Of a stretch of 64,000 nt of DNA, positions 1 to 24,184 are shown piece by piece. Position numbers and translations under genes: made by a program. Each line of letters starts with the position of its first letter. Position 1 is the stretch's first letter. The notes beneath the pieces were generated by a model. The model had not been told where the DNA came from and searched no databases. It saw only the letters and a program-made list of their open reading frames with translations. The DNA lies in IMG/VR virus record IMGVR_UViG_3300036770_004143, positions 62,001 to 126,000 of that record, one strand, 5' to 3'.

Positions 1-1
1 A

Positions 2-412
2 AGTGCCTGAGTTCAAATATTTAGAATCGTTTATGGATCTTTTATTGTCATATAAATGCGTATAATTTGTTGGAGGCCATAAACCTTTTTCTGCACCCAT
101 AATAATATTGCAATTTAATAGTGTAAATTTATCAATAATATCATTTGGTGGTTTGATAAAGTTTGTATCTGTCGCATCTAAAAATAAAATATATTCATAT
201 TTGCCAATAATATTTAATTCTATATATTCTAAAACCTTTACTGTTTTATAGTAAAATAATTTATCATAGTAAGACCCATTAGTTATTAATCCTGAGTTTC
301 TAACAATATGAATGTTATCAATAGGAAAATATTTTATGGCGTTTTTGTAAAATGTTGGCTCATAATAATCAGGATAATCAAATAGTGCTGTGATTAATGC
401 TATTTTATTCAT
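2..412 (-). CDS. PLOD/LH3-like GT-A glycosyltransferase domain protein (3' end runs off window)
   Basis: Not in ORF track; hand translation from ATG at 412 gives MNKIALITALFDYP...YILFLDATDTNF...IIMGAEKGLWPP...KYLNSGT, matching the DxxD / AExxxWP / LNSG motifs of the lysyl-hydroxylase glycosyltransferase domain; open to window edge. Confidence 0.7.
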   Translation of the reverse strand, partial: MNKIALITALFDYPDYYEPTFYKNAIKYFPIDNIHIVRNSGLITNGSYYDKLFYYKTVKVLEYIELNIIGKYEYILFLDATDTNFIKPPNDIIDKFTLLNCNIIMGAEKGLWPPTNYTHLYDNKRSINDSKYLNSGT

Positions 413-413
413 G

Positions 414-1052
414 TTAATTATTATTAATTTGTTTATAAAATTCATTTATAAGATTCTCATCACTCATATATATTTTGTCTTCACCAAAAAACTTAAATGG
501 TATTTCATTTTCCCAAAAAAATATCAATTCGTTTCCTTTTGAATTTTCAATAATTTTATTTGAATCATCATAAACTTCAATAAATGAAAATTTGGGATAA
601 ATACAAACCATATTATTACTAATATCAATAATTTGTTTATGATGAGCATTTCCTCTATATTTATTACCCCATAAAAAAGAAAATTCATTAAATTTTGATG
701 GTACTGCAACATATCCTTTATGTGATATTTTGGGTAATAGTTCTAACAAATCTGTTGGAGTTATTATATCTTCCAAAGTATGAGAACAAATGCTATAATC
801 AAATTTACCATACTTGTTAACGTACTCTAATAATTCAATCCAAGTAGTTTTATCTTGTATGTTAAAGTTAAAAAATTTTACATCATCTTTTTTTATTTCA
901 ACAATATCCGCAACAAATTTACATTCAGGATATGACCAAAATTGTAATGATGCGCCAATATCAATAGTTTTTAAATTATTATCAGATATTATTTTTTTAA
1001 CTTCATCTATTAATTGTTTAACGGATTTGTTGTATTGCCAATGTGTTATCAT
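414..1052 (-). CDS. Putative class I SAM-dependent methyltransferase
   Basis: IDIGAS motif I and FDYSICSHTLED strand; lies in methyltransferase/GT operon. Confidence 0.55.
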   Translation of the reverse strand: MITHWQYNKSVKQLIDEVKKIISDNNLKTIDIGASLQFWSYPECKFVADIVEIKKDDVKFFNFNIQDKTTWIELLEYVNKYGKFDYSICSHTLEDIITPTDLLELLPKISHKGYVAVPSKFNEFSFLWGNKYRGNAHHKQIIDISNNMVCIYPKFSFIEVYDDSNKIIENSKGNELIFFWENEIPFKFFGEDKIYMSDENLINEFYKQINNN

Positions 1053-1659
1053 AATTTTTATTTAAGAAAAATATATCTTGTTGAATTAACTCATATGTTA
1101 TTGGGTGATTTATATTACCAATAAGTTCCACAGGTTTAAACCCCAAATTATCCATATATTCGTAAACAAATTCTTTTGCTGGTGAATTTTTATTATATTC
1201 AACCAAAGAGATTTCCATTAAAATACCCTTAGCTTTTTTGAATATATCTATTCCCCCATTTATAATATCAATCTCAGACCCTTGGACATCAATTTTTATT
1301 AAATCAAATGTTTTATTTAAAAATATATTAGAAATTGTTTTAGTTTGTTTTTTTTTAATAATGATTTGATCATCATCATAAAAAGATGTGTTCTCTCGAT
1401 AAATTGAATTACCTGTACACCTTGGTTCGTTTTTTCTAATGTAAAAATCAACTTGTTTTGCAACGTCACTTAATAAATCTATTGAGTAGTCAACCCCCAA
1501 AGTACGCAATACATCTTCACAAGTTTCATTACCCTCAATCAAATAATAATAAGCATTTGGAAATACAATCATACTTTCTTTATAAAACTGACCAACATTA
1601 GCACCTATATCTAAAATTGATTTAGGTTCAAAATAATCTTTAATTTTTTCTAAACCCAT
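1018..1659 (-). CDS. FkbM-family methyltransferase
   Basis: ILDIGANVGQF and LIKIDVQGSEIDII motifs. Confidence 0.85.
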   Translation of the reverse strand: MGLEKIKDYFEPKSILDIGANVGQFYKESMIVFPNAYYYLIEGNETCEDVLRTLGVDYSIDLLSDVAKQVDFYIRKNEPRCTGNSIYRENTSFYDDDQIIIKKKQTKTISNIFLNKTFDLIKIDVQGSEIDIINGGIDIFKKAKGILMEISLVEYNKNSPAKEFVYEYMDNLGFKPVELIGNINHPITYELIQQDIFFLNKNYDNTLAIQQIR

Positions 1660-1665
1660 AATGAA

Positions 1666-2220
1666 TTAAAAAATTACTACCCCAGTTCCGGTTAAATGAC
1701 CTAAATGTGAAATATCTATTTTATTAATATCAATAAACTTCCAAAAAGTAATCATTTCTTCATTTAATTTTATGTCATCTAGTAAAAGATAACCTTTGTA
1801 ATTTATTTCCTTTAAATAATTGAAAAAAGTTTTCTCAAATGTTCCATCATGGAAAGTATCAAGCAAAATATATCTTGAACTTAATATTAAATCTAAATAT
1901 TCTGGTTTTAATATGTCATCAATATATACATTAATATTTGTAGGGGTAACTGTTAAAGTTAATTGATTATGTAAATTAAATGTATTAATTTTATTACTTG
2001 AATTTATAGACATAGCTAATGCTGAACACCCTTTAAGTGTTCCTATATCTAACATTTTAATACCATCATTGTTTAATGATATATAAGATAATAATCTATA
2101 ATGTTCTACTGAAGATTTAGACGTAAAATAATCTCTATATTCTAAATCATCAATCTTCAAAGATAATGTTGATAAATCAATTTTATCTAAATCTAAATTT
2201 GTTATTTTTTCAAAATCCAT
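1666..2220 (-). CDS. Class I SAM-dependent methyltransferase (Methyltransf_24-like)
   Basis: MLDIGTLKGCSALAM, YILLDTFHD, YLLLDDI motifs. Confidence 0.7.
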   Translation of the reverse strand: MDFEKITNLDLDKIDLSTLSLKIDDLEYRDYFTSKSSVEHYRLLSYISLNNDGIKMLDIGTLKGCSALAMSINSSNKINTFNLHNQLTLTVTPTNINVYIDDILKPEYLDLILSSRYILLDTFHDGTFEKTFFNYLKEINYKGYLLLDDIKLNEEMITFWKFIDINKIDISHLGHLTGTGVVIF

Positions 2221-2222
2221 AT

Positions 2223-3473
2223 TTATAACTCACCAGTTAACCTATCACACCAACCTTTAGATTCGCTATGTGGCCAAATAACCCAATATTTTGGTTGCCT
2301 AACCGCATTGAATTCCCTCCATACTTTGCAATATTTGTCGGGATCATTTAACATTCTATTAATCTCATTCTTATCTGCATCTGCTCTATGGATTGTTTCA
2401 TCATTCTCATCATGAAAAGCAACAACCCAAAAATCATAATCTTTTTCTGGAACAGATGAATATGAAACATCAATGCAATGCTTAAAAACACTTGAAAATG
2501 AATTTAACCAATCTTGCTCACTTTCATAATTATATGTATTTGGTGGATAAGTATGATTTATTGTTTCCTCCTGGATTGCCCTCCTTTCAAATAACATACC
2601 AGCATATCTCTCATAATCCCTCAATGTTCTAACCTTTCCAAATCCAAACAAACCATCATGACCTTCTTGTGTTAAACCATCCATTCCAAATAATTTCTTA
2701 TTTATCAAATGGGATTTTCTATTCTTCTCTGTCCATTCCTTATCATCATCCCATTGTTTTGTTCTATTTTTCCTTGTATATTCATGATACACTGTCAATC
2801 TATGTGGATGAAATAAATCATAACCATGTGTATATGCTCTTGCTGCAATGGATATTTCCTCACCATGAAAATAATATTCTGGATTATGTTGAACTTCAAT
2901 AGAGAATTGACCCAATGTGAAACAAAAATGGGCTGAATAGAATCTTGCTGGGACTGGTAAGGTTAAACTTTGCCAATCTTTTATTGCATCTGGCAAAAAG
3001 AAAACAGCGCCCTCTGGAATAAATCTATCAAATAACATTCTCCAAGGTTCTTTTGACCTTGCCTCTGGGTCATTATCTGGATCAAAAGATGTTACATAAC
3101 CTGTTAATAATGGTTTTGGATGACCTGCTTTTTGTAAATCCTTAATCATTTTAATTAAGATTGTATCCCAATTTTTCTCAAATCTCATATGAGAATCAAT
3201 CTGCAAGGTGTATTCCTCTCCATCATATAACTGTTGGGTTAAATTTCTTGCCCAACAAACACCCTCTGTCTCATTATATGGAATGTCAAGTATCTTGAAT
3301 CTCTTATCTTTTCTCCACTTGTCTAATGTGTCAAATTTATCATTTGGATGATATTGTCGTGCAATTGCAATAACCAAATTTTTTGGATATTTGGCATTTG
3401 ATAACATATCTTCTATGGTTGATTCTAATAAATGGTCTCTGTAAGAGGCAATTTGAACGAAAATTTTGCTCAT
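2223..3473 (-). CDS. GT60-like (Skp1/Gnt1-type) protein alpha-GlcNAc transferase
   Basis: IFVQIASYRD, GVCWARN, EEYTLQIDSHMRF..WD, FYSAHFCF, FHGEEISIAARAYTHGYDLFHP, YHEY: motif series typical of the Skp1-hydroxyproline GlcNAc-transferase family. Confidence 0.8.
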   Translation of the reverse strand: MSKIFVQIASYRDHLLESTIEDMLSNAKYPKNLVIAIARQYHPNDKFDTLDKWRKDKRFKILDIPYNETEGVCWARNLTQQLYDGEEYTLQIDSHMRFEKNWDTILIKMIKDLQKAGHPKPLLTGYVTSFDPDNDPEARSKEPWRMLFDRFIPEGAVFFLPDAIKDWQSLTLPVPARFYSAHFCFTLGQFSIEVQHNPEYYFHGEEISIAARAYTHGYDLFHPHRLTVYHEYTRKNRTKQWDDDKEWTEKNRKSHLINKKLFGMDGLTQEGHDGLFGFGKVRTLRDYERYAGMLFERRAIQEETINHTYPPNTYNYESEQDWLNSFSSVFKHCIDVSYSSVPEKDYDFWVVAFHDENDETIHRADADKNEINRMLNDPDKYCKVWREFNAVRQPKYWVIWPHSESKGWCDRLTGEL

Positions 3474-3524
3474 ATTATTTATCTTATATAAAATATATAG
3501 TTTTTTTTTATTTAAAATAAATAA

Positions 3525-4067
3525 TTAAATTATTAATTGCCAATTTAATGTCTCTTCATTCCAATAATTATTACCATCACTTGGGTATGGTGTTGGTGAA
3601 ACATAATAATTATTCTGATTTAATGACCAACTATCAAATGGTTTCATTAATTCCCAATTTATAATATCTTCATTCCAAACATATCTGTTGTATATTTTAT
3701 ATGGCTCTGGTATGTTTGATGTATCTGGATATGGTATTGGTGAATTCCATAAGCAACTAAATTCCTCTAATATCCATGAAGGAAAAGGTTTTGGAGGGAT
3801 AAAAGCATCCCTAATGCTGTCGTAGTAGTAACCTATTCCAGCATAGTTTTTTCTAAATGCCTTGCTTTGGTCTTGGCTTGGTGTGTTGTTATCAGATTGA
3901 TAATGAACACCACCTCTTGTATTGTAAGAGGTGCGTTTTGCAACACAATTATATAAGTTTGAATAATTTGTTTCAGTATCCAAACCATCTATAATATACG
4001 TCTCATCTGCACCACTTATAACAGATGTGACAAAATTTTCATTATTTAAAAGTGCGTAATGTGCCAT
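3525..4067 (-). CDS. Small partner protein of Thr/Pro-rich fibre 2 (paralog of 7765..8157)
   Basis: [41 protein letters not shown] and PIPYP/W repeats; start overlaps stop of upstream gene at 4067. Confidence 0.75.
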   Translation of the reverse strand: MAHYALLNNENFVTSVISGADETYIIDGLDTETNYSNLYNCVAKRTSYNTRGGVHYQSDNNTPSQDQSKAFRKNYAGIGYYYDSIRDAFIPPKPFPSWILEEFSCLWNSPIPYPDTSNIPEPYKIYNRYVWNEDIINWELMKPFDSWSLNQNNYYVSPTPYPSDGNNYWNEETLNWQLII

Positions 4068-7000
4068 TATGAAAATGTTACTGTTCCAGAATTTTTAATT
4101 TCTCTAATGTTATAACTACCATCAGTATAACTTACTGCATTTGTTTCAGCACCATTTGATAATGTAATAGTTGCAGAAGATGTTAACCATCTTATTATAA
4201 CAACACCTCTGCCACCTTTACCACCAATTGGGGTCTGCCCACCTGTTGCACCACCACCACCACCACCAGTGTAATCAGTACCAACACCACCAGCAGTATT
4301 AGCATCACCTTGTGAACCATTACCTCCACCTCCTATATCACCAGTTCCAGCAGTTAATCCTCCTCCTGCTCCACCTCCACCACCTCCACCACGAGGTATA
4401 TTATTTCCTGTTATTGCCGAATATAATCCAACACCACCATTCCCAGATTTAGTATTTGGTATACTATCTTGACCTTGTGCACCAGCACCCCCACCTCCAC
4501 CAGTAATTGAATTTACACCAATATAATTACCCCCATCATAACCTTGATTAGGAGAACCAGAACCACCTTTGTTTTCATTAGTTCTATTAGCAGCTCCGCC
4601 ACCAGAACCACCATTTGACCCATTTTCTGAAAAACCACCAGAACCACCACCACCACCAGCAATAGAAGTAATAGTTGCAAAAACACTATTAGTGCCATTT
4701 TGACCTTTTACTGTATAGGTTCCACCATTACCACCACCACCAATAGTAACTGTGTAAGTTGTCCCTTTTGTTAAATATAATGCAGTTTCAGCAGCCGAGC
4801 CACCTCCTGATGTACCAAAAGAAGTTCTATAACCTCCAGCACCACCTCCACCACCACGGTCAGCACCACCTCCACCTCCACCAGCAATAACAAGGTAATC
4901 AACTTGAATAGGGGGAACTGTTGGTGTAACTGTTCTTGTTGGTGTGATTGTTGGTGTAATTGTATTTGTAGGTGTAATTGTATTAGTTGGAGTTATTGTT
5001 GTTGTTGGAGTTATGGTATTTGTAGGCGTTATTGTTTGTGTTGGTGTAATGGTATTTGTAGGTGTAATTGTATTAGTTGGAGTTTCTGTATTGGTTGGTG
5101 TTATGGTTGGAGTTGGCGTTTCTGTGTTTGTTGGTGTTATAGTTTGAGTTGGTGTTTCTGTATTGGTTGGTGTTATAGTTGGAGTTGGTGTTTCACTACT
5201 TGTTGGAGTTTGTGTTGGGGTTTCTGTGTTGGTTGGTGTAATTGTATTAGTTGGAGTAATTGTATTTGTAGGTGTTATAGTTTGTGTTGGAGTTTTACTA
5301 CTTGTTGGAGTTATTGTTGGGGTTTCTGTATTTGTTGGTGTTATAGTTTGAGTTGGTGTTTCTGTATTGGTTGGTGTTATAGTTGGAGTTGGTGTTTCTG
5401 TGTTTGTTGGTGTTATGGTTGGAGTAGATGTTTCACTACTTGTTGGTGTTATAGTTTGAGTTGGTGTTTCTGTATTGGTTGGTGTTATAGTTGGAGTTGG
5501 TGTTTCACTACTTGTTGGAGTTTGTGTTGGGGTTTCTGTGTTGGTTGGTGTAATTGTATTAGTTGGAGTAATTGTATTTGTAGGTGTTATAGTTTGTGTT
5601 GGAGTTTTACTACTTGTTGGAGTTATTGTTGGGGTTTCTGTGTTGGTTGGTGTTGGGGTTTCTGTATTTGTTGGGGTTATGCTTGGAGTTGGTGTTTCTG
5701 TGTTGGTTGGTGTTATAGTTGGAGTTGGTGTTTCACTACTTGTTGGAGTTTGTGTATTGGTTGGAGTTATGGTTGGAGTTGGTGTTTCTGTGTTTGTTGG
5801 TGTAATTGTATTTGTAGGTGTTATAGTTTGTGTTGGAGTTTCTGTGTTGGTTGGAGTAATTGTATTTGTAGGTGTTATAGTGCTAGTTGGTGTTATGCTT
5901 GGAGTTGCATCTTGAGATGCTCCTGGTGTTTTTGTTATAGATGGTGTGACAGTATTAGTTGATGTTATGCTTGGAGTAGGTGTAACTGTGTTGGTTGGAG
6001 TTGGAGTTTGTGTTGGTGTTTCTGTATTTGTTGGTGTTATGGTTGGTGTTGGGGTTTCTGTATTTGTTGGGGTTATGCTTGGAGTTGGAGTTTCACTACT
6101 TGTTGGAGTTTGTGTTGGTGTAACTGTATTTGTTGGAGTTATTGTTGGTGTTATTGTGTTGGTTGGTGTTATAGTTGGGGTTGCATCTTGTGATGCCCCT
6201 GGTGTTTTTGTTAGAGATGGTGTGACTGTATTTGTTGCTGTTATAGTTGGTGTAATTGTGTTTGTTGATGTTGGAGTTATACTACTTGTTGGTGTAATTG
6301 TGTTAGTTGGTGTTATAGTTTGAGTTGGAGTTATACTACTTGTTGGTGTAATTGTGTTTGTTGGTGTTATAGTTTGAGTTGGTGTTATACTACTTGTTGG
6401 TGTAATTGTGTTAGTTGGTGTTATGGTTGGTGTTGGTGTTTTACTAGTTGTTGATGTAACTGTATTGGTTGGTGTTACAATTATTATATTTGTGCTTGTT
6501 GGTGTTGGTGTTAAAGCAGAAATTAACCCTCCTTGCCAAAATATATTATTATCAATGGTTATTGTATTTTCAGAACTTCTACCAACAACCAGATGAGTTT
6601 GTGTTGCTGCGGTATTTGAAAATTCAATGGAATTGCCCAACCAAGGTGAAATATTTATATTATTTGCAATATTATCAATTCTATTTGCCAATCCATGTGT
6701 TACAATATTATTAATACCATATACACCAGCAAACACCAAACCAATTATTTTTCTTGTTCCATTTATATCAGCAATTAATGCTGAACCAGAATCACCAGGT
6801 GCTATTGGATAAATGCAAATGAATCCATTTGGTGTGGTTGCAGCACTTGCAACAAATTCAATACAATTATCAAATTGAATTGTTGTTGGTAATCCTTGTC
6901 TTTCATATGAAATTGATATAACAACATTTGTTGCATATGTTAATAATTTCATATCACCTTCACCTTTTGCACCTGAAGTTCTACCTGAACTAAATAGGTT

Positions 7001-7753
7001 TGGATTTAAATATAATAAATCATCAATTTCTTGTGTTGTTGCAAATTCTAGTGGTTCTGTCCAACCAGTTAAACCCAATTGCAAATATGATTCTGAATAA
7101 CTTATATCTGATTCATTTATTGTGGTTAATGCAACATCACTATTATTATAACCATCAAACCTTAAAGGATAATATTTTTTTATAAAACCAATTGAATTTT
7201 GCAATCCTTTATCAGTTGGTTCATTTGGTTGCGTTGCAACATTATTTAAAATATTTGATAATTGTAATCTTGGATTTCTATCACTTGTTATAAATGCATC
7301 TTCAACTAGAACATGGTTATTGGATACACCAACCAAAGAATTTGTTTCATTATCAATAGCCAAAAACCCTAATGTGCCAACCCATGATCCATTTGATGCT
7401 GTATAATTTGTTAAAGATATTCCACCTTGTAATGGTCTTATTTTATTTCTGTTATTTGGATTTGTTGTTTGCCAAGAATAAAAATCTGATGGACATTCTT
7501 CCAAGAATTTTATTTCACATTCAACAACATCTGTTTTAAATGTGTTGCCAGAAAAATTAATTATGCTTGGTATTTGTTCATTTTCTGGTATATCAGAAAT
7601 ATTTAATTTCTTTTTTACTTTAAAAATTAATGATTTCTCATCTGTAACCAAATTGTTGGTTGTTTTATAACCATAACCAACACCAATAATATTTTCAGAT
7701 GTCTCTTCAAAATATTTTAATGTTAATTCTGATAATAATTTTTGATCAATCAT
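4067..7753 (-). CDS. Nal1-like trypsin-fold serine protease + Thr/Pro mucin-like stalk + Gly-rich C-terminal domain; probable virion fibre/appendage
   Basis: GTLGFL..SNNHVL (His), SDVALT (Asp), PGDSGS (Ser); about 530 aa of TPT(N/I/Q) repeats; [20 protein letters not shown] Gly-rich domain. Confidence 0.75.
4920..6510 (-). repeat. Coding low-complexity Thr/Pro tandem repeats ([10 protein letters not shown]-type)
   Basis: gttggtgtt/gttggagtt periodicity on plus strand; boundaries approximate. Confidence 0.9.
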
Positions 7754-7764
7754 TTAAATTTTAT

Positions 7765-8157
7765 TTATGTATTATAAATATTCCATTGTTTATTTTCCTC
7801 ATCCCAATAATATTGGTTGCCATCATTTGGATAAGGTATAGGTGGTTGCCATAAGCAACTAAATTCATCTAATGTCCAACTTGGGTATGGTTTTGGTGGG
7901 ATGAAAGCGTCCCTTATACTATCGTAATAATAACCTATTCCAGCATAGTTTTTTCTAAATGCCTTGCTTTGGTCAAGGCTTGGTGTATTGTTGTCGGATT
8001 GGTAGTGAATACCACCATGTGTGTTGTAGGATGTGCGTTTATGAACTATACCTAATTCATTAAACCAACCAATTTCACCATCCCAATCATCTTCATGACC
8101 AGCACTCTTCATATCTATTACAAAATTATTTTCATCTAAAACTGCATAATACGCCAT
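7765..8157 (-). CDS. Small partner protein of Thr/Pro-rich fibre 1 (paralog of 3525..4067)
   Basis: MAYYAVLDENNFV start at 8157 matches paralog; shares a 44-bp identical block (7931-7974 = 3829-3872). Confidence 0.75.
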   Translation of the reverse strand: MAYYAVLDENNFVIDMKSAGHEDDWDGEIGWFNELGIVHKRTSYNTHGGIHYQSDNNTPSLDQSKAFRKNYAGIGYYYDSIRDAFIPPKPYPSWTLDEFSCLWQPPIPYPNDGNQYYWDEENKQWNIYNT

Positions 8158-8171
8158 AATGTTATATTTTA

Positions 8172-11100
8172 TTACCATGAAATATTACCACTACCAGCAG
8201 TAAAAGTATATGTTTTATACCCTGCCCTTGCTGTTGATGGTGCAGGTGCAGTAGTTGTACCAGCTGCTTGACCATTACATACATGAGATGAGTGAATAGT
8301 TAATAAATTTGGAAAATTATCTGGATATGAAATAATTACAACGCCAGAACCACCTGAACCAGACACACCTGTACTACCTCTTTGTGCACCGCCACCACTA
8401 CCAGTATTTTGCACACCATTTCCTCCTGACCCAGGATTTCCTGCTACACCACCATTTGTACCTGGTGTTCCAGTTGAAGCCGACCCTGAACCAGCCCCTC
8501 CTCCTGCATAATCTTTTAAAATACCAGTAATATCTGATTTTTGGGAGTTTCCACCATTACCAACCAAATTTAAACCACCTGCACTACCAGCACCACCACC
8601 ACCACCACCAGCATTAGTGGTTGCAGTACCCCCAATATTACCTTGAATTGGATTTGTGTTTCTGCTCCCACCCGAAGCACCTCCACCAGCACCACTTGGT
8701 GCACCACCACCGCCTGAACCACCTGAACCACCTGGAGTATTTGAATACCATCCACCACCACCTCCACCAACACTTACTATATTTGCAAAAACAGAATTAT
8801 TACCTGGAACTTGATTTACATTTGACCCACCCTGACCACCAGGACCAACAGTTACTATATATGGTGTGTTCTTATTTATTAAGAATGAATTTTCTAAATT
8901 GCCCCCACCTCCAGTATTAGTAACTGTTGAACGCATTCCACCTGCTCCACCACCACCATTTCCTGGTGTTGTTGGGCTATCAGCGCCTCCAGCACCACCA
9001 CCAGCAACTACAAGGTAATCAACTGTAACAGTTGTTGGAATTGGCGAGGTTGTTGGAGTAATTGTTCTAGTTGGAGTTATGCTATTTGTTGGTGTTATGG
9101 TATTTGTAGGAGTTATAGTGTTGGTAGGTGTTATAGTATTTGTTGGTGTTATAGTGTTAGTTGGTGTTATGGTATTTGTTGGTGTAATTGTTGGTGTTAT
9201 AGTGTTAGTAGGTGTTATGGTTGGAGTTGGTGTTTCACTACTTGTTGGAGTTTGTGTTGGTGTTATAGTTTGAGTTGGTGTTTCACTACTTGTTGGAGTT
9301 TGTGTTGGTGTTTCTGTATTGGTTGGTGTTATGGTTGGAGTTGGTGTTTCACTACTTGTTTGAGTTTGTGTTGGTGTTATAGTTTGAGTTGGTGTTTCAC
9401 TACTTGTTGGAGTTTGTGTTGGTGTTTCTGTATTGGTTGGTGTTATGGTTGGAGTTGGTGTTTCACTACTTGTTGGAGTTTGTGTTGGTGTTATAGTTTG
9501 AGTTGGAGTGATTGTATTTGTAGGTGTTACTGTATTAGTTGGTGTTATGGTTGGAGTTGGTGTTTCACTACTTGTTTGAGTTTGTGTTGGTGTTATAGTT
9601 TGAGTTGGTGTTTCACTACTTGTTGGAGTTTGTGTTGGTGTTTCTGTATTGGTTGGTGTTATGGTTGGAGTTGGTGTCTCACTACTTGTTGGAGTTTGTG
9701 TTGGTGTTATAGTTTGAGTTGGTGTGATTGTATTTGTTGGTGTTACTGTATTAGTTGGAGTAATGGTTGGAGTTGGGTCTTGTGATGCTCCTGGTGTTTT
9801 TGTTACAGATGGTGTAATTGTATTTGTTGGTGTTATGCTTGGAGTAGATGTTTCACTACTTGTTGGAGTTTGTGTTGGTGTTTCTGTGTTGGTTGGTGTA
9901 ACTGTATTTGTTGGTGTTATGCTTGGAGTAATTGTGTTAGTTGGCGTTGGAGTTTCACTACTTGTTGGAGTTTGTGTTGGTGTTTCTGTATTGGTTGGTG
10001 TTATAGTTGGTGTTGCATCTTGTGATGCCCCTGGTGTCTTTGTTAGAGATGGTGTGACTGTATTTGTTGTAGTTATAGTTGGTGTAATTGTTTTGGTAGG
10101 TGTTGTAGTTATAGTTGGTGTAATTGTGTTGGTAGGTGTTGGAGTTTCACTACTTGTTGGAGTTATGGTTGGTGTTACTGTTTTTGTTGGTGTAATTGTT
10201 AGAGTTGTTGTTTGACTTATTGTTGGTGTGATGGTTGGAGTTATAATAAATATATTTGTACTTGTTGGTGTTGATGTAACAGATGGTGTTATAATTGGTG
10301 CTATATTTGGGAAGAATAAGAATATTGTTCTTATTGAATCATCATAAGAAGTAATAGTTGGTGTTATTGTTGGTGTAACAGTATTTGTTGGTGTTATTGT
10401 ATTTGTTGGTGTTATTGTATTTGTTGGTGTTATTGTTGATGTTCTTGTTACTGTTGGTGTTCTTGTTGCTGTTCTTGTTGGTGTTACTGTTCTTGTTAGT
10501 GTAGGTGTTGGTGTTAATGTTCTTGTAGGTGTAATACTTGGTGTTATAGTGTTTGTTGGAGTTTGTGTTGGTGTTATTGTATTTGTAGTTGTAACACTTG
10601 GTGTTATGCTATTTGTTGGAGTTTGTGTTGGTGTTACACTTGGTGTTGGAGGTACTATTATAATAGGTTCTTTATCTGGATTGAACGGATCAATTAATCC
10701 ATATTTTGTTTTTAATATTTTAAAATTATGTCTTACTTGTCCAGCATTTAATGGTTCAATATACATTCTAAATGCTCCCACATCACCAATTAAACTACCA
10801 CCAAATTCTTCTTCAAGAATGATATTTGTTGTTAAACCAGAATATGATGTATTATTTAATATATTAGTTGGCAATAATTCTGAATCTTGTATTAAATCAT
10901 TATTTGTTAATAATATTTGTATTTCTTCATTTTCTGTGCATGAACTTAATGTAAGGGAATCTTTAAGACCTTGTGTTCCACCCCCAATTGAAATATTGAA
11001 AGGTACACCAATTTGTCTTTCTTTTAGGGTATTTAATGGTCTTGGGATAATTTCCTCAAAATTATCAATGATGAAGAATATTTTACCATTTATGTATATT

Positions 11101-12476
11101 CTTAAATTTCCATTTCTATATTTTTTTGTATTAATCCATGATTGGTCAAAGTTAACCACTTCAATGGATGCATTTGTTTCACCACTTAATTTTGGTTGAA
11201 TTAATTCAATGCTTCTATCTGCTGTTGTTGCTGTATATTGGCTTGATATTAATAAACCTAATCCCCCAAGTTCTTTTAAATCACAATTTTCAATTAATCT
11301 ATCTCTAACAAATACTGCATCAATTTGAACCCAATTTTCATTTTGGATATATGTTGTATTTTTAAATTGGTCAAATATTCCTTTTGTTGAACACCATTGA
11401 TTTATGGTTGCACCTGATGTTTCACAAGTCCCTGTTAAGGTGAAAGTTTTAACACAGACTATTGGATTTCCAGAATCACCACTTAATTGAATTGATAATG
11501 CATTTGATACACCATCATATAATGGATTTGTTTCTGGGAATATTACATCTTTATCATAATTTGTAACACCAGTTATGGGATATACTTTATTGCAAGTTGA
11601 TGCTGAATATGTGGATGCTGAATAAGTTGAATTGCAAAGGCAAGTATCCAAGCAAGTTAAACCTGATGTTGGTCTTGTATAACCTGTGAATGATGTTGGA
11701 TGACCATCAGCATAATGATAAAATTTATTTTCTGCTCTTGCACCTAAATAAAAGAATGTTCCTTTATTTTGTGGATATCTTTCATTTAATCCCACTTGGG
11801 TATCCCCGGTCCATCTATATTTTAATATGAATTCTGCTGTCCAACCAAGATTTGGTCTTTCTGGGAATATTTCATAATCATAACCAAATAATCTATAAAA
11901 TCCTTGATAAAATCCCCCAGATAAATTTGCATATAAACCTGTGCTATTTGTTGAACCTGATGATATATTATAAGTATAACTATCATCATTATATATTCTA
12001 TTTGTGGTTGTTGTAAAACCTGTTATTGGATGAAGTTTTAATCTTCTATCAAATTTGTTTCTATTAAAAATATCATTTGGTGATGTGTATAATCCTGTAT
12101 TTATTTCAATGGTTTCACCTGAAATGTTTTGTGTTAACCCATTATCAATTCCTGTTAAACCAACATCACATAATGAAATTTTATTTTGATATGTATTTGC
12201 TGTTAAATTATAATTTTCTGGATTATAATAATTTTTTGAAACAATAACATCTGTGTTAAAATTATTGCAATTGATGCAAATGCTTGTTCCAGAATAGGAG
12301 AAATCAAAATTGAATGGCATTCTATTTCCATCATCTTCAGCAATTAATTTTGATGAAAAAACAGTTTCTTCATCATAATTCAATTCATCTGATGCCAAAC
12401 TTATATCAATAATTTCATTTACAGGTCTAAATCCAATCTTATTGAAATTATATTGATTAATATTTTGATAACTCAT
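8172..12476 (-). CDS. LamG/concanavalin-like domain + Thr/Pro mucin-like stalk + Gly-rich C-terminal domain; probable virion fibre/appendage
   Basis: NGNLRIYINGK..ISIGGG..GDVGAFRMYIEPLNAGQVRHNF LamG-like pattern; about 530 aa TP repeats; VDYLVVAGGGAGG Gly-rich domain. Confidence 0.65.
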   Translation of the reverse strand: MSYQNINQYNFNKIGFRPVNEIIDISLASDELNYDEETVFSSKLIAEDDGNRMPFNFDFSYSGTSICINCNNFNTDVIVSKNYYNPENYNLTANTYQNKISLCDVGLTGIDNGLTQNISGETIEINTGLYTSPNDIFNRNKFDRRLKLHPITGFTTTTNRIYNDDSYTYNISSGSTNSTGLYANLSGGFYQGFYRLFGYDYEIFPERPNLGWTAEFILKYRWTGDTQVGLNERYPQNKGTFFYLGARAENKFYHYADGHPTSFTGYTRPTSGLTCLDTCLCNSTYSASTYSASTCNKVYPITGVTNYDKDVIFPETNPLYDGVSNALSIQLSGDSGNPIVCVKTFTLTGTCETSGATINQWCSTKGIFDQFKNTTYIQNENWVQIDAVFVRDRLIENCDLKELGGLGLLISSQYTATTADRSIELIQPKLSGETNASIEVVNFDQSWINTKKYRNGNLRIYINGKIFFIIDNFEEIIPRPLNTLKERQIGVPFNISIGGGTQGLKDSLTLSSCTENEEIQILLTNNDLIQDSELLPTNILNNTSYSGLTTNIILEEEFGGSLIGDVGAFRMYIEPLNAGQVRHNFKILKTKYGLIDPFNPDKEPIIIVPPTPSVTPTQTPTNSITPSVTTTNTITPTQTPTNTITPSITPTRTLTPTPTLTRTVTPTRTATRTPTVTRTSTITPTNTITPTNTITPTNTVTPTITPTITSYDDSIRTIFLFFPNIAPIITPSVTSTPTSTNIFIITPTITPTISQTTTLTITPTKTVTPTITPTSSETPTPTNTITPTITTTPTKTITPTITTTNTVTPSLTKTPGASQDATPTITPTNTETPTQTPTSSETPTPTNTITPSITPTNTVTPTNTETPTQTPTSSETSTPSITPTNTITPSVTKTPGASQDPTPTITPTNTVTPTNTITPTQTITPTQTPTSSETPTPTITPTNTETPTQTPTSSETPTQTITPTQTQTSSETPTPTITPTNTVTPTNTITPTQTITPTQTPTSSETPTPTITPTNTETPTQTPTSSETPTQTITPTQTQTSSETPTPTITPTNTETPTQTPTSSETPTQTITPTQTPTSSETPTPTITPTNTITPTITPTNTITPTNTITPTNTITPTNTITPTNTITPTNSITPTRTITPTTSPIPTTVTVDYLVVAGGGAGGADSPTTPGNGGGGAGGMRSTVTNTGGGGNLENSFLINKNTPYIVTVGPGGQGGSNVNQVPGNNSVFANIVSVGGGGGGWYSNTPGGSGGSGGGGAPSGAGGGASGGSRNTNPIQGNIGGTATTNAGGGGGGAGSAGGLNLVGNGGNSQKSDITGILKDYAGGGAGSGSASTGTPGTNGGVAGNPGSGGNGVQNTGSGGGAQRGSTGVSGSGGSGVVIISYPDNFPNLLTIHSSHVCNGQAAGTTTAPAPSTARAGYKTYTFTAGSGNISW
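9030..10660 (-). repeat. Coding low-complexity Thr/Pro tandem repeats
   Basis: Repeating [21 protein letters not shown] units; boundaries approximate. Confidence 0.9.
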
Positions 12477-12531
12477 TTATATATATATTATAATAAATAG
12501 TATTTAAATGATATTTATGAATAAAAGTCAA

Positions 12532-15171: not shown

Positions 15172-16392
15172 ATGAGTAAAAAAATAAAAGTTCTAGTTAT
15201 ACCATCCGACCGGTCAGGGGTTGGAAAATTCCGGTCAATTGACCCCCATCTTTTCTTGCAATCAGAATACCCAAGTGAATTTCATGTGGATATTAACTAT
15301 GAACCACCAATGGATGATATGAACTTTTGGAAAGATTATGAGATTGTTGCATTTCATAGAAGTATTGGTCATGATTTTGAGAGGGCAAAGAATCTTATAC
15401 TTACATTAAACAAAATGGGTATTATTACAGTATGTGATATTGATGACTATTGGATGCCAACAAAAGACCATCCAATACATGAGATTATAAAAATTCATAA
15501 GATAAATGAGAAGATTATTGAAAATTTAAAGGCAGCAAGTTATGTCACCACAACAACAAGGATATATGCAGATTTAATAAGGAAGTATAATAAGAATGTG
15601 TTTGTGTTTCCAAATGCTATAAATCCAAAAGACCCCCAATTTAATGAACCAACATTGGAATCTGATAGGGTGAGAGTTGGTTGGTTAGGTGGTTCTAGCC
15701 ATATGGCAGATCTTAATTTATTGGATAAATCATTTGGTTCATTGACAAAATATTCAAATAAATTACAATTTGTGTTATGTGGATTTGACACAAGAGGTTC
15801 AGTTACAGAAATAAATGCTGAAACAAAAGAGCAAAAGAAGAGAAATATAAAACCAGAGGAAACTGTTTGGGCAAGGTATGAGGAAATATTTACCCAAAAA
15901 TATTCCACAATAAGCGAGGATTATAAGAAATTTTTGCTTAAATTTGTGCAAGAATCTTATGATAAGGAAAGTGATGAGGCTTATGTGAGAGCCTGGACAA
16001 AACCTGTTACAAGTTATGCTAGGAATTATGCAAAATTTGACATATCTTTGGCACCTATAAAGAATCATATTTTTAATGAGATGAAGTCACAGTTAAAGGT
16101 AATTGAGGCTGGGTTTTATAAGAAAGCATTAATTGCCACAAATTTTGGACCATACACTATAGACTTGAAACATGGTTTAAATAAAGGTACATTTGTAAAG
16201 GGAGGGAATGCTCTATTGGTTGACGCAGATAGGAATGCTATTGATTGGGCAAAATACATTGAGAAGTTAATGAAGAACCCAAATTTGGTTAAAGACTTGG
16301 GGGAGAATTTGTATGAAACAGTAAAGGATACTTATTCCTTGGTTAATGTTACAAAAAACAGAGCAGAATTTTATAAATCACTAATTAAATAA
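15172..16392 (+). CDS. GT-B (GT4-like) glycosyltransferase
   Basis: GVGKFRSIDP, CDIDDYW, RVGWLGGSSH, DISLAP..FNEMKSQLKVIEAG motifs. Confidence 0.8.
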   Translation: MSKKIKVLVIPSDRSGVGKFRSIDPHLFLQSEYPSEFHVDINYEPPMDDMNFWKDYEIVAFHRSIGHDFERAKNLILTLNKMGIITVCDIDDYWMPTKDHPIHEIIKIHKINEKIIENLKAASYVTTTTRIYADLIRKYNKNVFVFPNAINPKDPQFNEPTLESDRVRVGWLGGSSHMADLNLLDKSFGSLTKYSNKLQFVLCGFDTRGSVTEINAETKEQKKRNIKPEETVWARYEEIFTQKYSTISEDYKKFLLKFVQESYDKESDEAYVRAWTKPVTSYARNYAKFDISLAPIKNHIFNEMKSQLKVIEAGFYKKALIATNFGPYTIDLKHGLNKGTFVKGGNALLVDADRNAIDWAKYIEKLMKNPNLVKDLGENLYETVKDTYSLVNVTKNRAEFYKSLIK

Positions 16393-16399
16393 CTATAAC

Positions 16400-17101
16400 A
16401 TGATAAATGTACCTTTAAACAAGATTTTATTTCTGGATATTGAAACAGTTGGTTGTGAAGCCAGTTTTGATAATTTAAAAACAAATAAACCTGAATTAGC
16501 TTACCAGTTTGAAAATTATTTTGATTGGTTTGAGAAAAGATTCCCAGAAGATGGTGCAGATGGTTTTGATTCTATGTTTCATAATAGATCAGCACTTGTT
16601 GGTGAATTTTTGAAAATTGCTTGTGTTTCTTTGGCCTTTGTTAATGATGATGGGACAATTAAAATGCAATCATTTTCTGGAACAGATGAATTGGATATTT
16701 TACAAAAAACTCAAAAGGTTTTGCAAAAAGTTGGTTCACTTAACTATTTCCTTTGTGGTCATAATGTAAAGGGTTTTGATATTCCCATATTAGCAAAGAG
16801 AATGATGATTAATGGTTTAATGCCTCCAAAAATTTTACCAAGTTATGATACAAAACCTTGGGAAATTAAAGCAATTGATACAAAAGATATTTGGCAATAT
16901 GGTCAATTTGGTTCAATTGCATCTTTGGAATTGATGTGTGTTAGCCTTGGGATTGAATCTTCAAAGAATATGGATGTGACAGGAAACAAGGTGCATGATG
17001 CATATTGGATTGATGGCAACATTGAAGGTATTACCAAATACTGTGAGAGAGATGTGGAAGTGTTAATTGATGTCATTAAAAAATTAATGTTATTAAAATG
17101 A
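16400..17101 (+). CDS. Stand-alone PolB-like DEDDy 3'-5' exonuclease
   Basis: LFLDIET, GHNVKGFDIP, YCERDV exo I/II/III motifs. Confidence 0.85.
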   Translation: MINVPLNKILFLDIETVGCEASFDNLKTNKPELAYQFENYFDWFEKRFPEDGADGFDSMFHNRSALVGEFLKIACVSLAFVNDDGTIKMQSFSGTDELDILQKTQKVLQKVGSLNYFLCGHNVKGFDIPILAKRMMINGLMPPKILPSYDTKPWEIKAIDTKDIWQYGQFGSIASLELMCVSLGIESSKNMDVTGNKVHDAYWIDGNIEGITKYCERDVEVLIDVIKKLMLLK

Positions 17102-17487
17102 GAATTTGGGTAAATGGTTGCTTTGACGTGTTGCACATTGGACATATATCATTATTAGAGTATGCAAAAACACTTGGATATGTCCTAGTTGGTGTTGATT
17201 CTGATGAAAGGGTCAAACAATTGAAAGGCAATGATAGACCTGTAAATTCTGTTGATGATAGGATTAAGATGTTAAAATCTTTGAAATTTGTGGATGATGT
17301 TTGTATGTTTGATACAGATACAGAGTTAAATGACATCTTATACCTATATCAACCAGATGTTATTGTGATTGGTGATGATTATAAATCAAAGAATATAATT
17401 GGTTCAGAACACGCAAAAAGAATTGATTTTTTTGAAAAAAAGAATGATATTAGTACAACTAAAATTTTAAATCATAAAAACAAATAA
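17098..17487 (+). CDS. Cytidylyl/adenylyltransferase (TagD / RfaE domain II-like)
   Basis: NGCFDVLHIGH HIGH motif, VGVDSD, ISTTKI. Confidence 0.85.
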   Translation: MRIWVNGCFDVLHIGHISLLEYAKTLGYVLVGVDSDERVKQLKGNDRPVNSVDDRIKMLKSLKFVDDVCMFDTDTELNDILYLYQPDVIVIGDDYKSKNIIGSEHAKRIDFFEKKNDISTTKILNHKNK

Positions 17488-17488
17488 A

Positions 17489-18103: not shown

Positions 18104-18116
18104 TATAAAAAATAAT

Positions 18117-19628: not shown

Positions 19629-19636
19629 TTTAAATA

Positions 19637-20392: not shown

Positions 20393-20395
20393 AAT

Positions 20396-21496: not shown

Positions 21497-21530
21497 TACC
21501 TATTATTTATTATTAAATAAAAACAACTTA

Positions 21531-22262: not shown

Positions 22263-22275
22263 TTTGACAAAAAAT

Positions 22276-23135: not shown

Positions 23136-23136
23136 C

Positions 23137-24183: not shown

Positions 24184-24184
24184 A

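What the first reader, a model, noticed from the sequence alone, without database searches (positions are those of the whole stretch)
2..12476. Candidate phage mucin-type protein O-glycosylation locus
Seen: one co-directional minus-strand run holds two proteins with about 500-residue Thr/Pro stalks, their partner genes, a GT60-type GlcNAc transferase, three methyltransferases and a PLOD-like GT. Established: GT60 enzymes modify proteins (Dictyostelium Gnt1 on Skp1 hydroxyproline; trypanosomatid homologs start mucin O-GlcNAc chains on Thr) and are related to GT27 polypeptide GalNAc-transferases. The PLOD GT domain also acts on protein. Inference: the phage encodes both the mucin-like substrates and the enzymes that build a methylated glycan coat on virion fibres, which could stiffen the stalks, resist proteases or mimic host or mucus glycans.
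Basis: partly seen in the sequence, partly recalled or inferred. Interest (0 to 1): 0.8.

Follow-up and report, generated by a model that had tools for sequence, protein, structure and literature searches.

The report
Phage mucin-like fibre glycosylation locus
A jumbo phage encodes two fibre-like proteins with roughly 500-residue threonine/proline stalks next to a sugar transferase of the family that starts mucin-type sugar coats in protists. The same enzyme-beside-Thr/Pro-protein pairing recurs in related phages and in bacteria of at least six phyla, which points to an undescribed prokaryotic protein-glycosylation system that still needs biochemical proof.

Summary
The window is part of a 270-kb jumbo-phage contig. 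Its minus-strand run 1-12476 encodes two modular proteins with Thr/Pro stalks (543 and 532 residues; about 45% Thr, 19% Pro). Each is followed by a small paralogous partner gene. Then come a GT60-type glycosyltransferase, three methyltransferase-like genes and the start of a PLOD-type GT. The GT60 hit is strong: Pfam PF11397 2e-67, invariant DxH motif, AlphaFold pLDDT 95.8. Its best solved structural neighbours are GT27 polypeptide GalNAc-transferases. On the parent contig the cassette continues with GT10-like, CmcI-like, HtrL-like genes and a second GT60.

Of 80 related phage loci, 73 have Thr/Pro-rich ORFs within 10 kb of GT60, all on its strand. In 80 bacterial GT60 loci, Thr/Pro ORFs are about 40-fold denser within 500 bp than at 5-10 kb (p 7e-10). 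That pattern is scattered over the GT60 tree and over 8 phyla, sometimes with PqqD peptide-binding domains.

The reverse link is weak: only 7 of 120 viral Thr/Pro-repeat loci carry GT60.

Sugar transfer, virion location and the methylation target are not shown.

Verdict: interpretation partly supported; a new variant of a known kind; interest about 0.7.

The parts
8172..12476 (-). Stalk protein B (1434 aa). It has a conserved ~600-aa head (nt 10668-12476), a Thr/Pro stalk (about nt 9012-10667) and a C-terminal glycine-rich domain (nt 8175-9011).
   Evidence: ORF. Thr/Pro segments are residues 604-713 and 734-1155. Gly_rich_2 PF21722 scores 4.2e-15. The head is syntenic and 44-87% identical in 16+ related loci upstream of GT60. 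LamG/ConA-like fold is only a lead. The structure model failed (pLDDT 31).
7765..8178 (-). Partner gene 2 (137 aa). Its start overlaps the end of B.
   Evidence: phrog_7759 1.2e-30. It is 59% identical to partner 1. The same family follows Gly_rich_2 genes in podophages HTVC025P (gp43/gp44) and CRP-143 (gp39/gp40).
4067..7753 (-). Stalk protein A (1228 aa). It has a chymotrypsin-like head (nt 6518-7753), a Thr/Pro stalk (nt 4889-6517) and a glycine-rich domain (nt 4070-4888).
   Evidence: ORF. The Thr/Pro segment is residues 413-955. Gly_rich_2 scores 4.8e-20. The head has H147/D206/S322 (GDSGS) conserved at 95% or more in 60 homologues, and those homologues carry many different C-terminal binding domains. 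The Pfam Trypsin hit is only sub-threshold.
3525..4067 (-). Partner gene 1 (180 aa). Its start overlaps the stop of A.
   Evidence: phrog_7759 2.1e-34. tblastn finds relatives in 31 aquatic phage records.
2223..3473 (-). GT60-type glycosyltransferase (416 aa), the proposed initiating polypeptide HexNAc transferase.
   Evidence: PF11397 2.3e-67; phrog_24687 1.9e-158. D93, H95, H230, E205 and E206 are invariant in 38 diverse homologues. AF2 pLDDT 95.8. The top Foldseek PDB hits are GalNAc-T4, T2, T1, T12 and T10.
1666..2220 (-). Probable class I SAM methyltransferase (184 aa, Methyltransf_24/3-like).
   Evidence: No Pfam hit. ESM Atlas features score 0.96 to Methyltransf_24/Methyltransf_3 clusters. 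The orthologous position in L003 and L010 holds Methyltransf_24 genes.
1018..1659 (-). FkbM-family methyltransferase (213 aa).
   Evidence: PF05050 3.9e-14; TIGR01444 4.9e-12; phrog_8156.
414..1052 (-). Probable class I SAM methyltransferase (212 aa, Methyltransf_11/23-like).
   Evidence: Only a weak MetW hit (E 0.05). ESM Atlas features score 0.95 to Methyltransf_11/23 clusters.
1..412 (-). N-terminal 137 residues of a PLOD-type GT-A glycosyltransferase. The gene runs off the window start.
   Evidence: PF25342 2.6e-08 in the window. The full gene at L006:13062-13766 scores 8.3e-16.
15172..24991 (+). Further glycan genes outside the finding, possibly part of the same glycosylation capacity. 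They are a GT4-like gene (15172-16392), a double GT2 (18117-19628), UDP-galactopyranose mutase (20396-21496), a GT1-group gene (23137-24183) and a GT2 (24185-24991).
   Evidence: phrog_7162 2.7e-41. PF13712 plus PF00535, and PF03275 1.2e-68. PF00534 and PF00535. A link to the stalk proteins was not tested.

Best explanation
The locus is a self-contained protein O-glycosylation module of a jumbo phage.

What is shown:
- Two modular, fibre-like proteins are each built as head, long Thr/Pro stalk, glycine-rich C-terminal domain, followed by a small partner gene.
- They are encoded in one compact, co-directional gene run with a soluble GT60-type GT-A enzyme. That enzyme has no signal peptide or membrane segment in its sequence and carries an intact DxH metal site.
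- Three methyltransferase-like genes and further glycosyltransferases follow in the same run.

What is inferred:
1. During infection the GT60 enzyme works in the host cytoplasm. It transfers a HexNAc, most likely alpha-GlcNAc from the abundant UDP-GlcNAc pool, onto Thr hydroxyls of the TPTxTPTx repeats. This mirrors Trypanosoma cruzi OGNT on its mucins and the sister GT27 GalNAc-transferases.
2. The second GT60 paralogue, the PLOD-type, GT10-like and HtrL-like transferases extend the sugars.
3. The FkbM, CmcI-like and other methyltransferases O-methylate the sugars.
4. The result would be an extended, bottle-brush-like stalk. It would hold the distal module away from its anchor.
5. The glycine-rich domain plus partner behaves like a swappable receptor-binding and assembly module.
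For: Enzyme identity:
- PF11397 2.3e-67.
- D93-x-H95, H230 and E205/E206 are invariant.
- The model is confident and its nearest solved folds are GT27 ppGalNAc-Ts.
- The literature states that GT60 and GT27 are sister retaining families sharing DxH and polypeptide Ser/Thr O-glycosylation (PMC7185993).
- TcOGNT1 makes GlcNAc-alpha-1-O-Thr on mucins, and that GlcNAc is later extended with Gal and Galf (PMC9472816). The window also encodes UDP-galactopyranose mutase.

Linkage in phages:
- 73 of 80 related loci have Thr/Pro-rich ORFs within 10 kb.
- All 133 such ORFs lie on the GT60 strand.
- There are 25,016 Thr/Pro residues in 528 kb upstream against 2,036 in 756 kb downstream.
- The Thr/Pro proteins have many different architectures.
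- Four more divergent viral GT60 genes also sit beside Thr/Pro genes.

Linkage in bacteria:
- 33 of 80 loci have a Thr/Pro ORF within 10 kb.
- Density is 14.5 per 100 kb within 500 bp of GT60 against 0.36 at 5-10 kb (p 6.5e-10).
- The state changes at least 19 times on the GT60 tree and occurs in 8 phyla.
- Some substrates or enzymes carry PqqD peptide-recognition domains.

Fibre nature:
- The Gly_rich_2 plus phrog_7759 pair sits in the tail-fibre regions of podophages.
- Homologues of the A head sit in fibre, neck and sheath neighbourhoods and carry swapped binding domains.
Against: - There is no biochemical or proteomic evidence of any kind.
- The 80 phage loci are one clade with GT60 at least 71% identical, so their synteny is not 80 independent observations.
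- The lineage L008-L010 keeps two GT60 genes and the GT cassette but has no Thr/Pro or Ser/Thr-rich ORF within 10 kb.
- 47 of 80 bacterial GT60 loci have no Thr/Pro ORF nearby.
- Thr/Pro stalks are common in aquatic phage fibres without GT60 in cis: 113 of 120 loci, plus L293-L295.
- GT60 is unusually conserved (71-94%) while the putative substrates are hypervariable.
- Donor sugar, linkage and methylation target cannot be read from sequence.
- Virion location is inferred only from context in other phages.
Confidence: 0.58

Rival explanations
1. The Thr/Pro stalks are unmodified, or host-modified, spacers like the Pro/Thr linkers of bacterial cellulases. The GT/MT cassette then serves another target, such as a host envelope polysaccharide (superinfection exclusion or receptor masking), the capsid, or phage DNA. 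Adjacency would reflect shared late expression or shared hypervariability rather than an enzyme-substrate relation.
For: - Thr/Pro stalks occur widely without GT60 nearby.
- L008-L010 keep the cassette without Thr/Pro genes.
- Most bacterial GT60 loci (47 of 80) lack Thr/Pro neighbours.
- The phage carries many further GT2/GT4 genes and Glf, which are typical of polysaccharide synthesis.
- A paper on aquatic jumbo phages lists DNA, serotype conversion and virion as equally open targets for their core GTs (PMC12619734).
Against: - Every characterised GT60 enzyme named in the papers read acts on polypeptide.
- The nearest solved folds are polypeptide GalNAc-transferases rather than polysaccharide synthases.
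- The 40-fold positional enrichment of Thr/Pro ORFs next to GT60 in cellular genomes of many phyla cannot be explained by phage late-gene organisation.
- PqqD peptide-binding domains accompany GT60 in bacteria.
Confidence: 0.27
2. The GT60 enzyme works like Dictyostelium/Toxoplasma Gnt1. It would add GlcNAc to hydroxyproline, not threonine, after prolyl hydroxylation of the Pro residues in the repeats.
For: The stalks are about 19% Pro. By the finding's own account and by my own knowledge of the family, GT60 includes the Skp1 hydroxyproline GlcNAc transferase. A homologue of the partner gene abuts a 2OG-Fe(II) oxygenase in one phage record (H11).
Against: No prolyl 4-hydroxylase or 2OG-Fe(II) oxygenase domain was found in any ORF of the run, its extension on L006, or the 20 further window ORFs scanned. 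Thr is more than twice as abundant as Pro, and it is the constant feature of the bacterial neighbours too.
Confidence: 0.04
3. The stalk proteins are glycosylated as proposed but are not virion fibres. They would be released or cell-associated proteins, for example a protease on a stalk acting on host or competitor surfaces.
For: - The locus lies among nucleotide-metabolism and GT genes, 25 kb from the head genes.
- No tail genes were recognised nearby.
- The head of A keeps an intact serine-protease triad.
- The GT60-adjacent Thr/Pro proteins in bacteria have Tat-like signals or membrane segments.
Against: - The Gly_rich_2 plus partner pair lies in podophage tail-fibre regions.
- Homologues of the A head lie beside neck and sheath genes and show the domain-swapping pattern of receptor-binding proteins.
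- No signal peptide is evident at either N-terminus.
Confidence: 0.11

Closest known systems
GT60 polypeptide alpha-GlcNAc transferases of protists (T. cruzi TcOGNT1 on mucins; Dictyostelium/Toxoplasma Gnt1 on Skp1)
   Same: Same Pfam family (PF11397), GT-A fold and DxH motif. Like TcOGNT1, the candidate acceptor beside it is dense in Thr and Pro. A UDP-Galf-forming mutase in the same genome parallels the Galf extension of T. cruzi O-GlcNAc.
   Different: The host is prokaryotic and viral, and the protein is soluble with no membrane anchor. It has an extra conserved beta-rich C-terminal domain of about 115 residues (residues 300-416). It is often present as two paralogues, and it is paired with O-methyltransferases. 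No activity has been shown.
GT27 polypeptide GalNAc-transferases (animal mucin-type O-glycosylation)
   Same: These are the nearest solved structures (Foldseek E 1e-10 to 1e-8, probability 1.00). They share the DxH metal site and have a two-domain layout of catalytic plus C-terminal domain.
   Different: Sequence identity is only 9-15%, and neither sequence nor profile searches hit the PDB. The C-terminal domain is much smaller than a ricin-type lectin. TM-scores of 0.45-0.54 are modest.
Mycobacteriophage virion O-glycosylation (Freeman et al. 2023, as cited in PMC12619734)
   Same: Phage-encoded glycosyltransferases are proposed, and there shown, to decorate the phage's own structural proteins.
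   Different: According to that citation, the glycans there sit on the C-termini of capsid and tail-tube subunits. The system here involves a GT60 enzyme, 500-residue Thr/Pro repeat stalks on fibre-like proteins, a much larger GT/MT cassette and an aquatic jumbo phage.
Cytoplasmic glycosylation of bacterial serine-rich-repeat adhesins (GtfA/GtfB O-GlcNAc) and chlorovirus/mimivirus self-encoded glycosylation with sugar methylation
   Same: By my own knowledge, these are dedicated cytoplasmic enzymes encoded beside a long Ser/Thr-rich repeat substrate. Giant viruses likewise carry their own GTs and sugar O-methyltransferases for capsid or fibril glycans.
   Different: The enzyme families differ (GT4/GT8 for serine-rich-repeat proteins). 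None of these systems uses GT60. These comparisons are analogy only and were not tested here.

Membership tests
CAZy GT60 / Pfam PF11397 (GlcNAc transferase) | Significant match to the family profile over the catalytic domain | tested here: met
   PF11397 2.3e-67, 228 bits against a cut-off of 21. The second copy on L006 scores 8.8e-65. CAZy's own classifier (dbCAN) was not available.
CAZy GT60 / Pfam PF11397 (GlcNAc transferase) | GT-A fold with DxH in place of DxD, plus a distal His | tested here: met
   D93-S94-H95 and H230 are invariant in 38 homologues. The AF2 model has pLDDT 95.8 with a Rossmann-like beta/alpha core. PMC7185993 states that DxH is the GT27/GT60 hallmark. The three-dimensional geometry of the metal site was not inspected.
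CAZy GT60 / Pfam PF11397 (GlcNAc transferase) | Retaining transfer of GlcNAc from UDP-GlcNAc to a polypeptide Thr/Ser/Hyp | not testable with these tools
   This needs an enzyme assay. Only indirect support is available, from gene neighbourhood.
Mucin-type O-glycosylation system (initiating polypeptide HexNAc transferase plus Thr/Pro-rich tandem-repeat acceptor plus extending enzymes) | Long tandem repeats rich in Thr and Pro in the candidate acceptor | tested here: met
   Segments of 543 aa and 110+422 aa have 43-45% Thr and 18-19% Pro. The DNA shows tandem repeats of 18-312 nt.
Mucin-type O-glycosylation system (initiating polypeptide HexNAc transferase plus Thr/Pro-rich tandem-repeat acceptor plus extending enzymes) | Non-random association of enzyme and acceptor genes across genomes | tested here: met
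   In the enzyme-to-acceptor direction: 73 of 80 phage loci, about 40-fold enrichment next to GT60 in bacteria (p 6.5e-10), and at least 19 state changes on the tree. The acceptor-to-enzyme direction is weak at 7 of 120.
Mucin-type O-glycosylation system (initiating polypeptide HexNAc transferase plus Thr/Pro-rich tandem-repeat acceptor plus extending enzymes) | Glycans actually attached to the repeats | not testable with these tools
   This requires glycoproteomics or in vitro transfer.
Phage tail fibre / receptor-binding protein | Modular protein with a conserved head and exchangeable distal domains, encoded with a small downstream assembly or adhesin partner in a structural gene context | tested here: inconclusive
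   Modularity and domain swapping are shown. The Gly_rich_2 plus phrog_7759 pair lies in podophage fibre regions. Homologues of the A head lie near sheath and neck genes. In this window, however, the locus sits among GT and nucleotide-metabolism genes, and there is no PHROG 'tail' annotation.
SAM-dependent sugar O-methyltransferases | Profile match to a methyltransferase family | tested here: inconclusive
   Met for 1018-1659 (FkbM, PF05050 3.9e-14). For 1666-2220 and 414-1052 there is only language-model similarity. That a sugar is the methyl acceptor was not tested.
PLOD-type GT domain (PF25342) | Profile match above the gathering score | tested here: met
   33.8 bits for the truncated window part and 58.4 bits for the full gene, against a cut-off of 27. 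Whether the acceptor is protein or glycan is unknown.

The most novel reading that the evidence does not exclude
GT60 enzymes together with Thr/Pro-repeat proteins form a widespread, so far undescribed 'mucin-type' cytoplasmic O-HexNAc glycosylation system of bacteria and their large phages. In bacteria it sometimes comes with PqqD-type peptide-recognition domains or Tat-like export signals. This phage carries an extreme version, with two stalks of about 540 residues and a cassette of ten or more GT/MT genes, which produces methylated glycan bottle-brush fibres.
Probability: 0.4. Interest if true: 0.85.

Novelty: new variant of a known kind. Interest (0 to 1): 0.7.

Why it matters
Mucin-type O-glycosylation initiated by GT27/GT60 enzymes is regarded as a eukaryotic trait. 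The only GT60 activities named in the papers read here are from protists. Phage virion glycosylation is documented mainly for mycobacteriophages, which use a different arrangement.

If the GT60-Thr/Pro link is functional, three things follow:
- It assigns a substrate class to a very large orphan family. That family has about 4,500 representative clusters and more than 7,000 close relatives in jumbo-phage contigs.
- It explains why Thr/Pro stalk genes and GT cassettes travel together.
- It offers simple, soluble enzymes for making mucin-like glycopeptides in bacteria.

It would also bear on how aquatic jumbo phages build long, protease-resistant fibres. And it would suggest that bacteria of many phyla make glycosylated Thr/Pro tails, some of them exported.

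Tried and rejected
- Megablast of the 12.6-kb run against 50,697 phage records gave no match.
- phmmer and a 38-sequence profile of the GT60 protein against PDB sequences gave no relative. Only the fold search worked.
- tblastn with the glycine-rich domain was blanked by the low-complexity filter.
- An IMG/VR scan with a distant GT60 (P0147) gave only three weak loci. DNA for its own contigs was unavailable, so its Thr/Pro content could not be checked.
- AlphaFold of the B head with a 16-sequence alignment failed (pLDDT 31), so no fold search was made. The LamG assignment is only a language-model lead with a low shared-feature count.
- The promoter/terminator scan found fewer sites than shuffles, so it gives no information on transcription units.
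- RNA-library contigs cover parts of the GT60 gene at 90-100% likeness. They are short, come from relatives, and may be DNA carry-over, so this is not evidence of co-transcription.
- The hydroxyproline route was considered and set aside because no prolyl hydroxylase was found.
- DNA glycosylation was considered and set aside because of the bacterial neighbourhood data.
- Whether the phage belongs to the published 'moraphages' (PMC12619734) could not be established.
Full report
**What the window is.**
The window is AT-rich (about 30% G+C). It encodes a major head protein, a portal and a large terminase. It is 100% identical at the GT60 gene to IMG/VR contig 3300036770_004143, which is 270 kb. 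So it is a piece of a jumbo phage. Near-identical DNA occurs in subsurface, freshwater, river and wastewater metagenomes. No isolate phage is close at the DNA level.

**Checking the observation.**
The minus strand from 12476 down to 1 is one compact, co-directional run.
- Protein B (8172-12476, 1434 aa) and protein A (4067-7753, 1228 aa) contain Thr/Pro segments of 110+422 and 543 residues. These are 43-45% Thr and 18-19% Pro.
- They are the only such ORFs in the 64 kb.
- The repeats are visible as DNA tandem arrays with periods of 18 to 312 nt.
- Both proteins end in a Pfam Gly_rich_2 domain (4.8e-20 and 4.2e-15).
- Each is followed, with overlapping stop and start, by a small gene of phrog_7759. 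The two partners are 59% identical.
- Next come a full-length PF11397 (GT60-type) glycosyltransferase (2.3e-67; phrog_24687 1.9e-158) and an FkbM methyltransferase (3.9e-14).
- Two further small genes resemble class I methyltransferases only by language-model features.
- Last are the first 137 residues of a PLOD-type GT.

The description is therefore correct, with one caveat. Two of the three 'methyltransferases' rest on weaker evidence.

**The locus is bigger than reported.**
On the parent contig the run continues past the window edge. It holds the rest of the PLOD-type GT, a GT10-like gene, a CmcI/rhamnosyl-O-methyltransferase-like gene, a 785-aa HtrL/YibB protein and a second GT60 that is 69% identical to the first. 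On the other side, on the plus strand, the window holds a GT4-like gene, a double GT2, UDP-galactopyranose mutase, another GT1-group gene and a GT2. This phage thus carries at least ten glycosyltransferase domains and four methyltransferase-like genes within about 35 kb.

**The enzyme.**
- An alignment of 38 homologues down to 35% identity keeps D93, H95, H230, E205, E206 and R97 invariant.
- D93-x-H95 is the DxH motif that replaces DxD specifically in GT27 and GT60 (PMC7185993).
- Neither sequence nor profile searches find any solved relative.
- The AlphaFold model is very confident (pLDDT 95.8, pTM 0.91).
- Its best PDB neighbours are almost all polypeptide GalNAc-transferases: GalNAc-T4, T2, T1, T12, T10 and T7, PGANT9 and TgGalNAc-T3. 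They score E 1e-10 to 1e-8 at probability 1.00, but TM-scores are only 0.45-0.54.
- The protein starts directly with the first beta-strand and has no signal or membrane segment.
- It has a conserved beta-rich C-terminal domain beyond the Pfam region.
- In the papers read, TcOGNT1, a GT60 enzyme, makes GlcNAc-alpha-1-O-Thr on T. cruzi mucins, later extended with Gal and Galf (PMC9472816).

**Co-occurrence in the phage's own clade.**
The family is huge in metagenomes. More than 7,000 proteins score E<=1e-10, and the best 120 are 71-94% identical on contigs up to 331 kb. IMG/VR holds 566 loci. I scanned the 80 best loci with a fixed rule: a 30-residue window with T+P at least 60%.
- 73 of the 80 have a Thr/Pro-rich ORF within 10 kb.
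- All 133 such ORFs are on the GT60 strand.
- Thr/Pro residues are about 17 times denser upstream than downstream.
- The Thr/Pro proteins differ greatly between loci. Examples are the B head followed by stalks of 60 to 690 residues, 'beads on a string' proteins, and small 190-aa proteins with one linker. Meanwhile GT60 stays 71-100% identical.
- In some relatives the gene just upstream instead carries Gly-Ser/Thr triplet repeats.
- Exceptions with full flanks are L008-L010. There the B homologue stops after the head, no Thr/Pro or Ser/Thr-rich ORF is seen, and yet two GT60 genes and a large GT cassette remain.

These 80 loci are one clade, so they count as conserved synteny and not as 80 independent tests.

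**Independent test in bacteria.**
A profile of distant homologues found 571+ loci in GTDB genomes.
- Among the 80 loci kept, 33 have a Thr/Pro-rich ORF within 10 kb.
- Density falls from 14.5 per 100 kb within 500 bp of GT60 to 0.36 per 100 kb at 5-10 kb. Thirteen of the 15 ORFs in those two bins lie within 500 bp of GT60 (binomial p 6.5e-10).
- On a tree of the GT60 domains, the state 'Thr/Pro ORF within 3 kb' (25 of 80) needs at least 19 changes. Label shuffles give a mean of 21.6.
- The state occurs in Pseudomonadota, Bacteroidota, Verrucomicrobiota, Acidobacteriota, Gemmatimonadota, Actinomycetota, Planctomycetota and Myxococcota. The link is therefore recurrent and not inherited from one ancestor.
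- Several loci lie on contigs of 0.2-1.2 Mb, so they are cellular.
- The neighbouring proteins are short. Some have a PqqD domain (PF05402 1.5e-07), then a hydrophobic segment and a Thr/Pro tail. Others have a twin-arginine-like N-terminus followed by a Thr/Pro tail.
- One GT60 carries a weak C-terminal PqqD match. Another locus reads GT60-PqqD-ScmC-GT60.
- PqqD-type domains are peptide-binding recognition elements, by established knowledge. This fits a polypeptide acceptor.

**The reverse direction.**
A scan of IMG/VR for DNA encoding TPTxTPTxTPTxTPT returned 120 loci totalling 1.14 Mb. Seven contain a GT60, four of them from divergent GT60 lineages. My rough estimate, not computed, is that this is far above chance, given only hundreds to a few thousand GT60 genes in 2.9 million contigs. 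But 94% of Thr/Pro loci have no GT60 nearby. Three fibre clusters with very long Thr/Pro stalks (L293-L295) likewise have none within 10 kb. So GT60 predicts a Thr/Pro neighbour much better than a Thr/Pro stalk predicts GT60.

**What the stalk proteins are.**
- The head of A has 82 relatives. In the 60 best that I aligned, H147, D206 and S322 (in GDSGS) are at least 95% conserved. It is therefore probably an active chymotrypsin-fold protease, although the Pfam Trypsin hit is sub-threshold.
- Those relatives carry different C-terminal modules: DUF642, DUF285, LamG, cadherin, LRR and BNR. Forty-five of the 82 have a Thr/Pro linker right after the head.
- Three of their loci lie beside neck and sheath genes or among other large Thr/Pro proteins.
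- The Gly_rich_2 plus phrog_7759 pair recurs in podophages HTVC025P and CRP-143, downstream of tail genes. It is absent from the other 78 GT60 loci. This is the signature of a swapped distal module.
- The head of B is the syntenic constant of the clade. Its fold could not be modelled, and a LamG-like fold is only a lead.

'Virion fibre' is thus a reasonable inference from modularity and from context in other phages, but it is not a demonstrated fact.

**Mechanism proposed.**
*Shown:*
- gene order
- domain content
- an intact catalytic motif
- non-random linkage of GT60 to Thr/Pro genes

*Inferred:*
1. Cytoplasmic GT60 adds HexNAc to Thr of the repeats.
2. The paralogue and the other GTs extend the sugars.
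3. The methyltransferases cap the sugars.
4. The glycosylated stalk becomes extended and protease-resistant.

I put 0.58 on the enzyme-substrate relation. The main rival, at 0.27, is that the cassette serves another target and the linkers are plain spacers. A hydroxyproline route is unlikely because no prolyl hydroxylase was found.

**Novelty.**
A full-text search found no paper linking GT60 or PF11397 to phages or to bacterial Thr/Pro proteins. A 2025 paper on aquatic jumbo phages with predicted Bacteroidota hosts notes four core GT families of unknown target (PMC12619734). Whether this phage belongs to that lineage is untested. Virus-encoded protein glycosylation and GT60 chemistry are both known. 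What is new is the combination of a GT60 cassette with self-encoded mucin-like stalks in a phage, and its bacterial counterpart. I rate it a new variant of a known kind with interest 0.7, pending a simple co-expression and mass-spectrometry test.

Noticed in passing
window 58765-59186 (+): The phage encodes a full-length tmRNA. ARAGORN predicts the tag peptide GNTLETLATLGLVREDAVVAA, and Rfam RF00023 scores 87.1 bits (E 2e-32) over model positions 1-374 of 374.
   Followed up: partly
window 54792-56804 (+): An FtsH-like ATP-dependent protease gene (phrog_4871, 1.1e-228) lies next to the tmRNA region. The tmRNA tag and this protease may work together on tagged proteins.
   Followed up: no
window 15172-24991 (+): A second block of glycan genes lies outside the finding. 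It holds a GT4-like gene, a double GT2, UDP-galactopyranose mutase (PF03275 1.2e-68), a GT1-group gene and a GT2. These are interleaved with a PolB-type exonuclease, dUTPase and PhoH.
   Followed up: partly
window 6518-7753 (-), residues 1-412 of protein A: The head domain keeps a chymotrypsin-type H/D/S triad conserved in 60 homologues. Those homologues carry many alternative C-terminal binding domains. It looks like a protease mounted on a fibre-like protein.
   Followed up: partly
L102 8438-9232, L106 9212-9952, L139 11491-12126, L145 11479-12240, L095 2687-3442: Bacterial GT60 genes are flanked by short proteins of two kinds. One kind has a PqqD domain, then a hydrophobic segment, then a Thr/Pro tail. 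The other has a twin-arginine-like N-terminus plus a Thr/Pro tail. One GT60 (L145 9923-11611) has a weak C-terminal PqqD match.
   Followed up: partly
L003 8642-9928; L031 1-831: In some close relatives the gene directly upstream of GT60 carries 140-180 residues of Gly-Ser/Thr triplet repeats (GTSGSSGSS...), which look collagen-like, instead of Thr/Pro repeats.
   Followed up: no
L010 19884-21173 (-): A related phage contig encodes an ORF that ends like an outer-membrane TonB-dependent/SusC-type beta-barrel. This fits a Bacteroidota host.
   Followed up: no
proteins P0122-P0124, P0131, P0133: Some GT60 representatives are 1,000-2,500 residues long and contain up to four separate GT60-like stretches. 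They are multi-domain GT60 proteins of unknown origin.
   Followed up: no
window 12477-12507: Only 31 bases separate the divergent start codons of stalk protein B (minus strand) and the 272-aa gene at 12508 (plus strand). That leaves very little room for two promoters.
   Followed up: no
L001/L002 (Xanthomonas phages Xoo-sp13, XacN1): In these isolated jumbo phages the GT60 homologue (43-45% identical) sits beside a carbamoyltransferase. It is about 5 kb from a ~3,300-aa protein that follows baseplate genes and has a 45-residue Thr/Pro/Ser segment near its C-terminus. This could be a culturable test system.
   Followed up: partly
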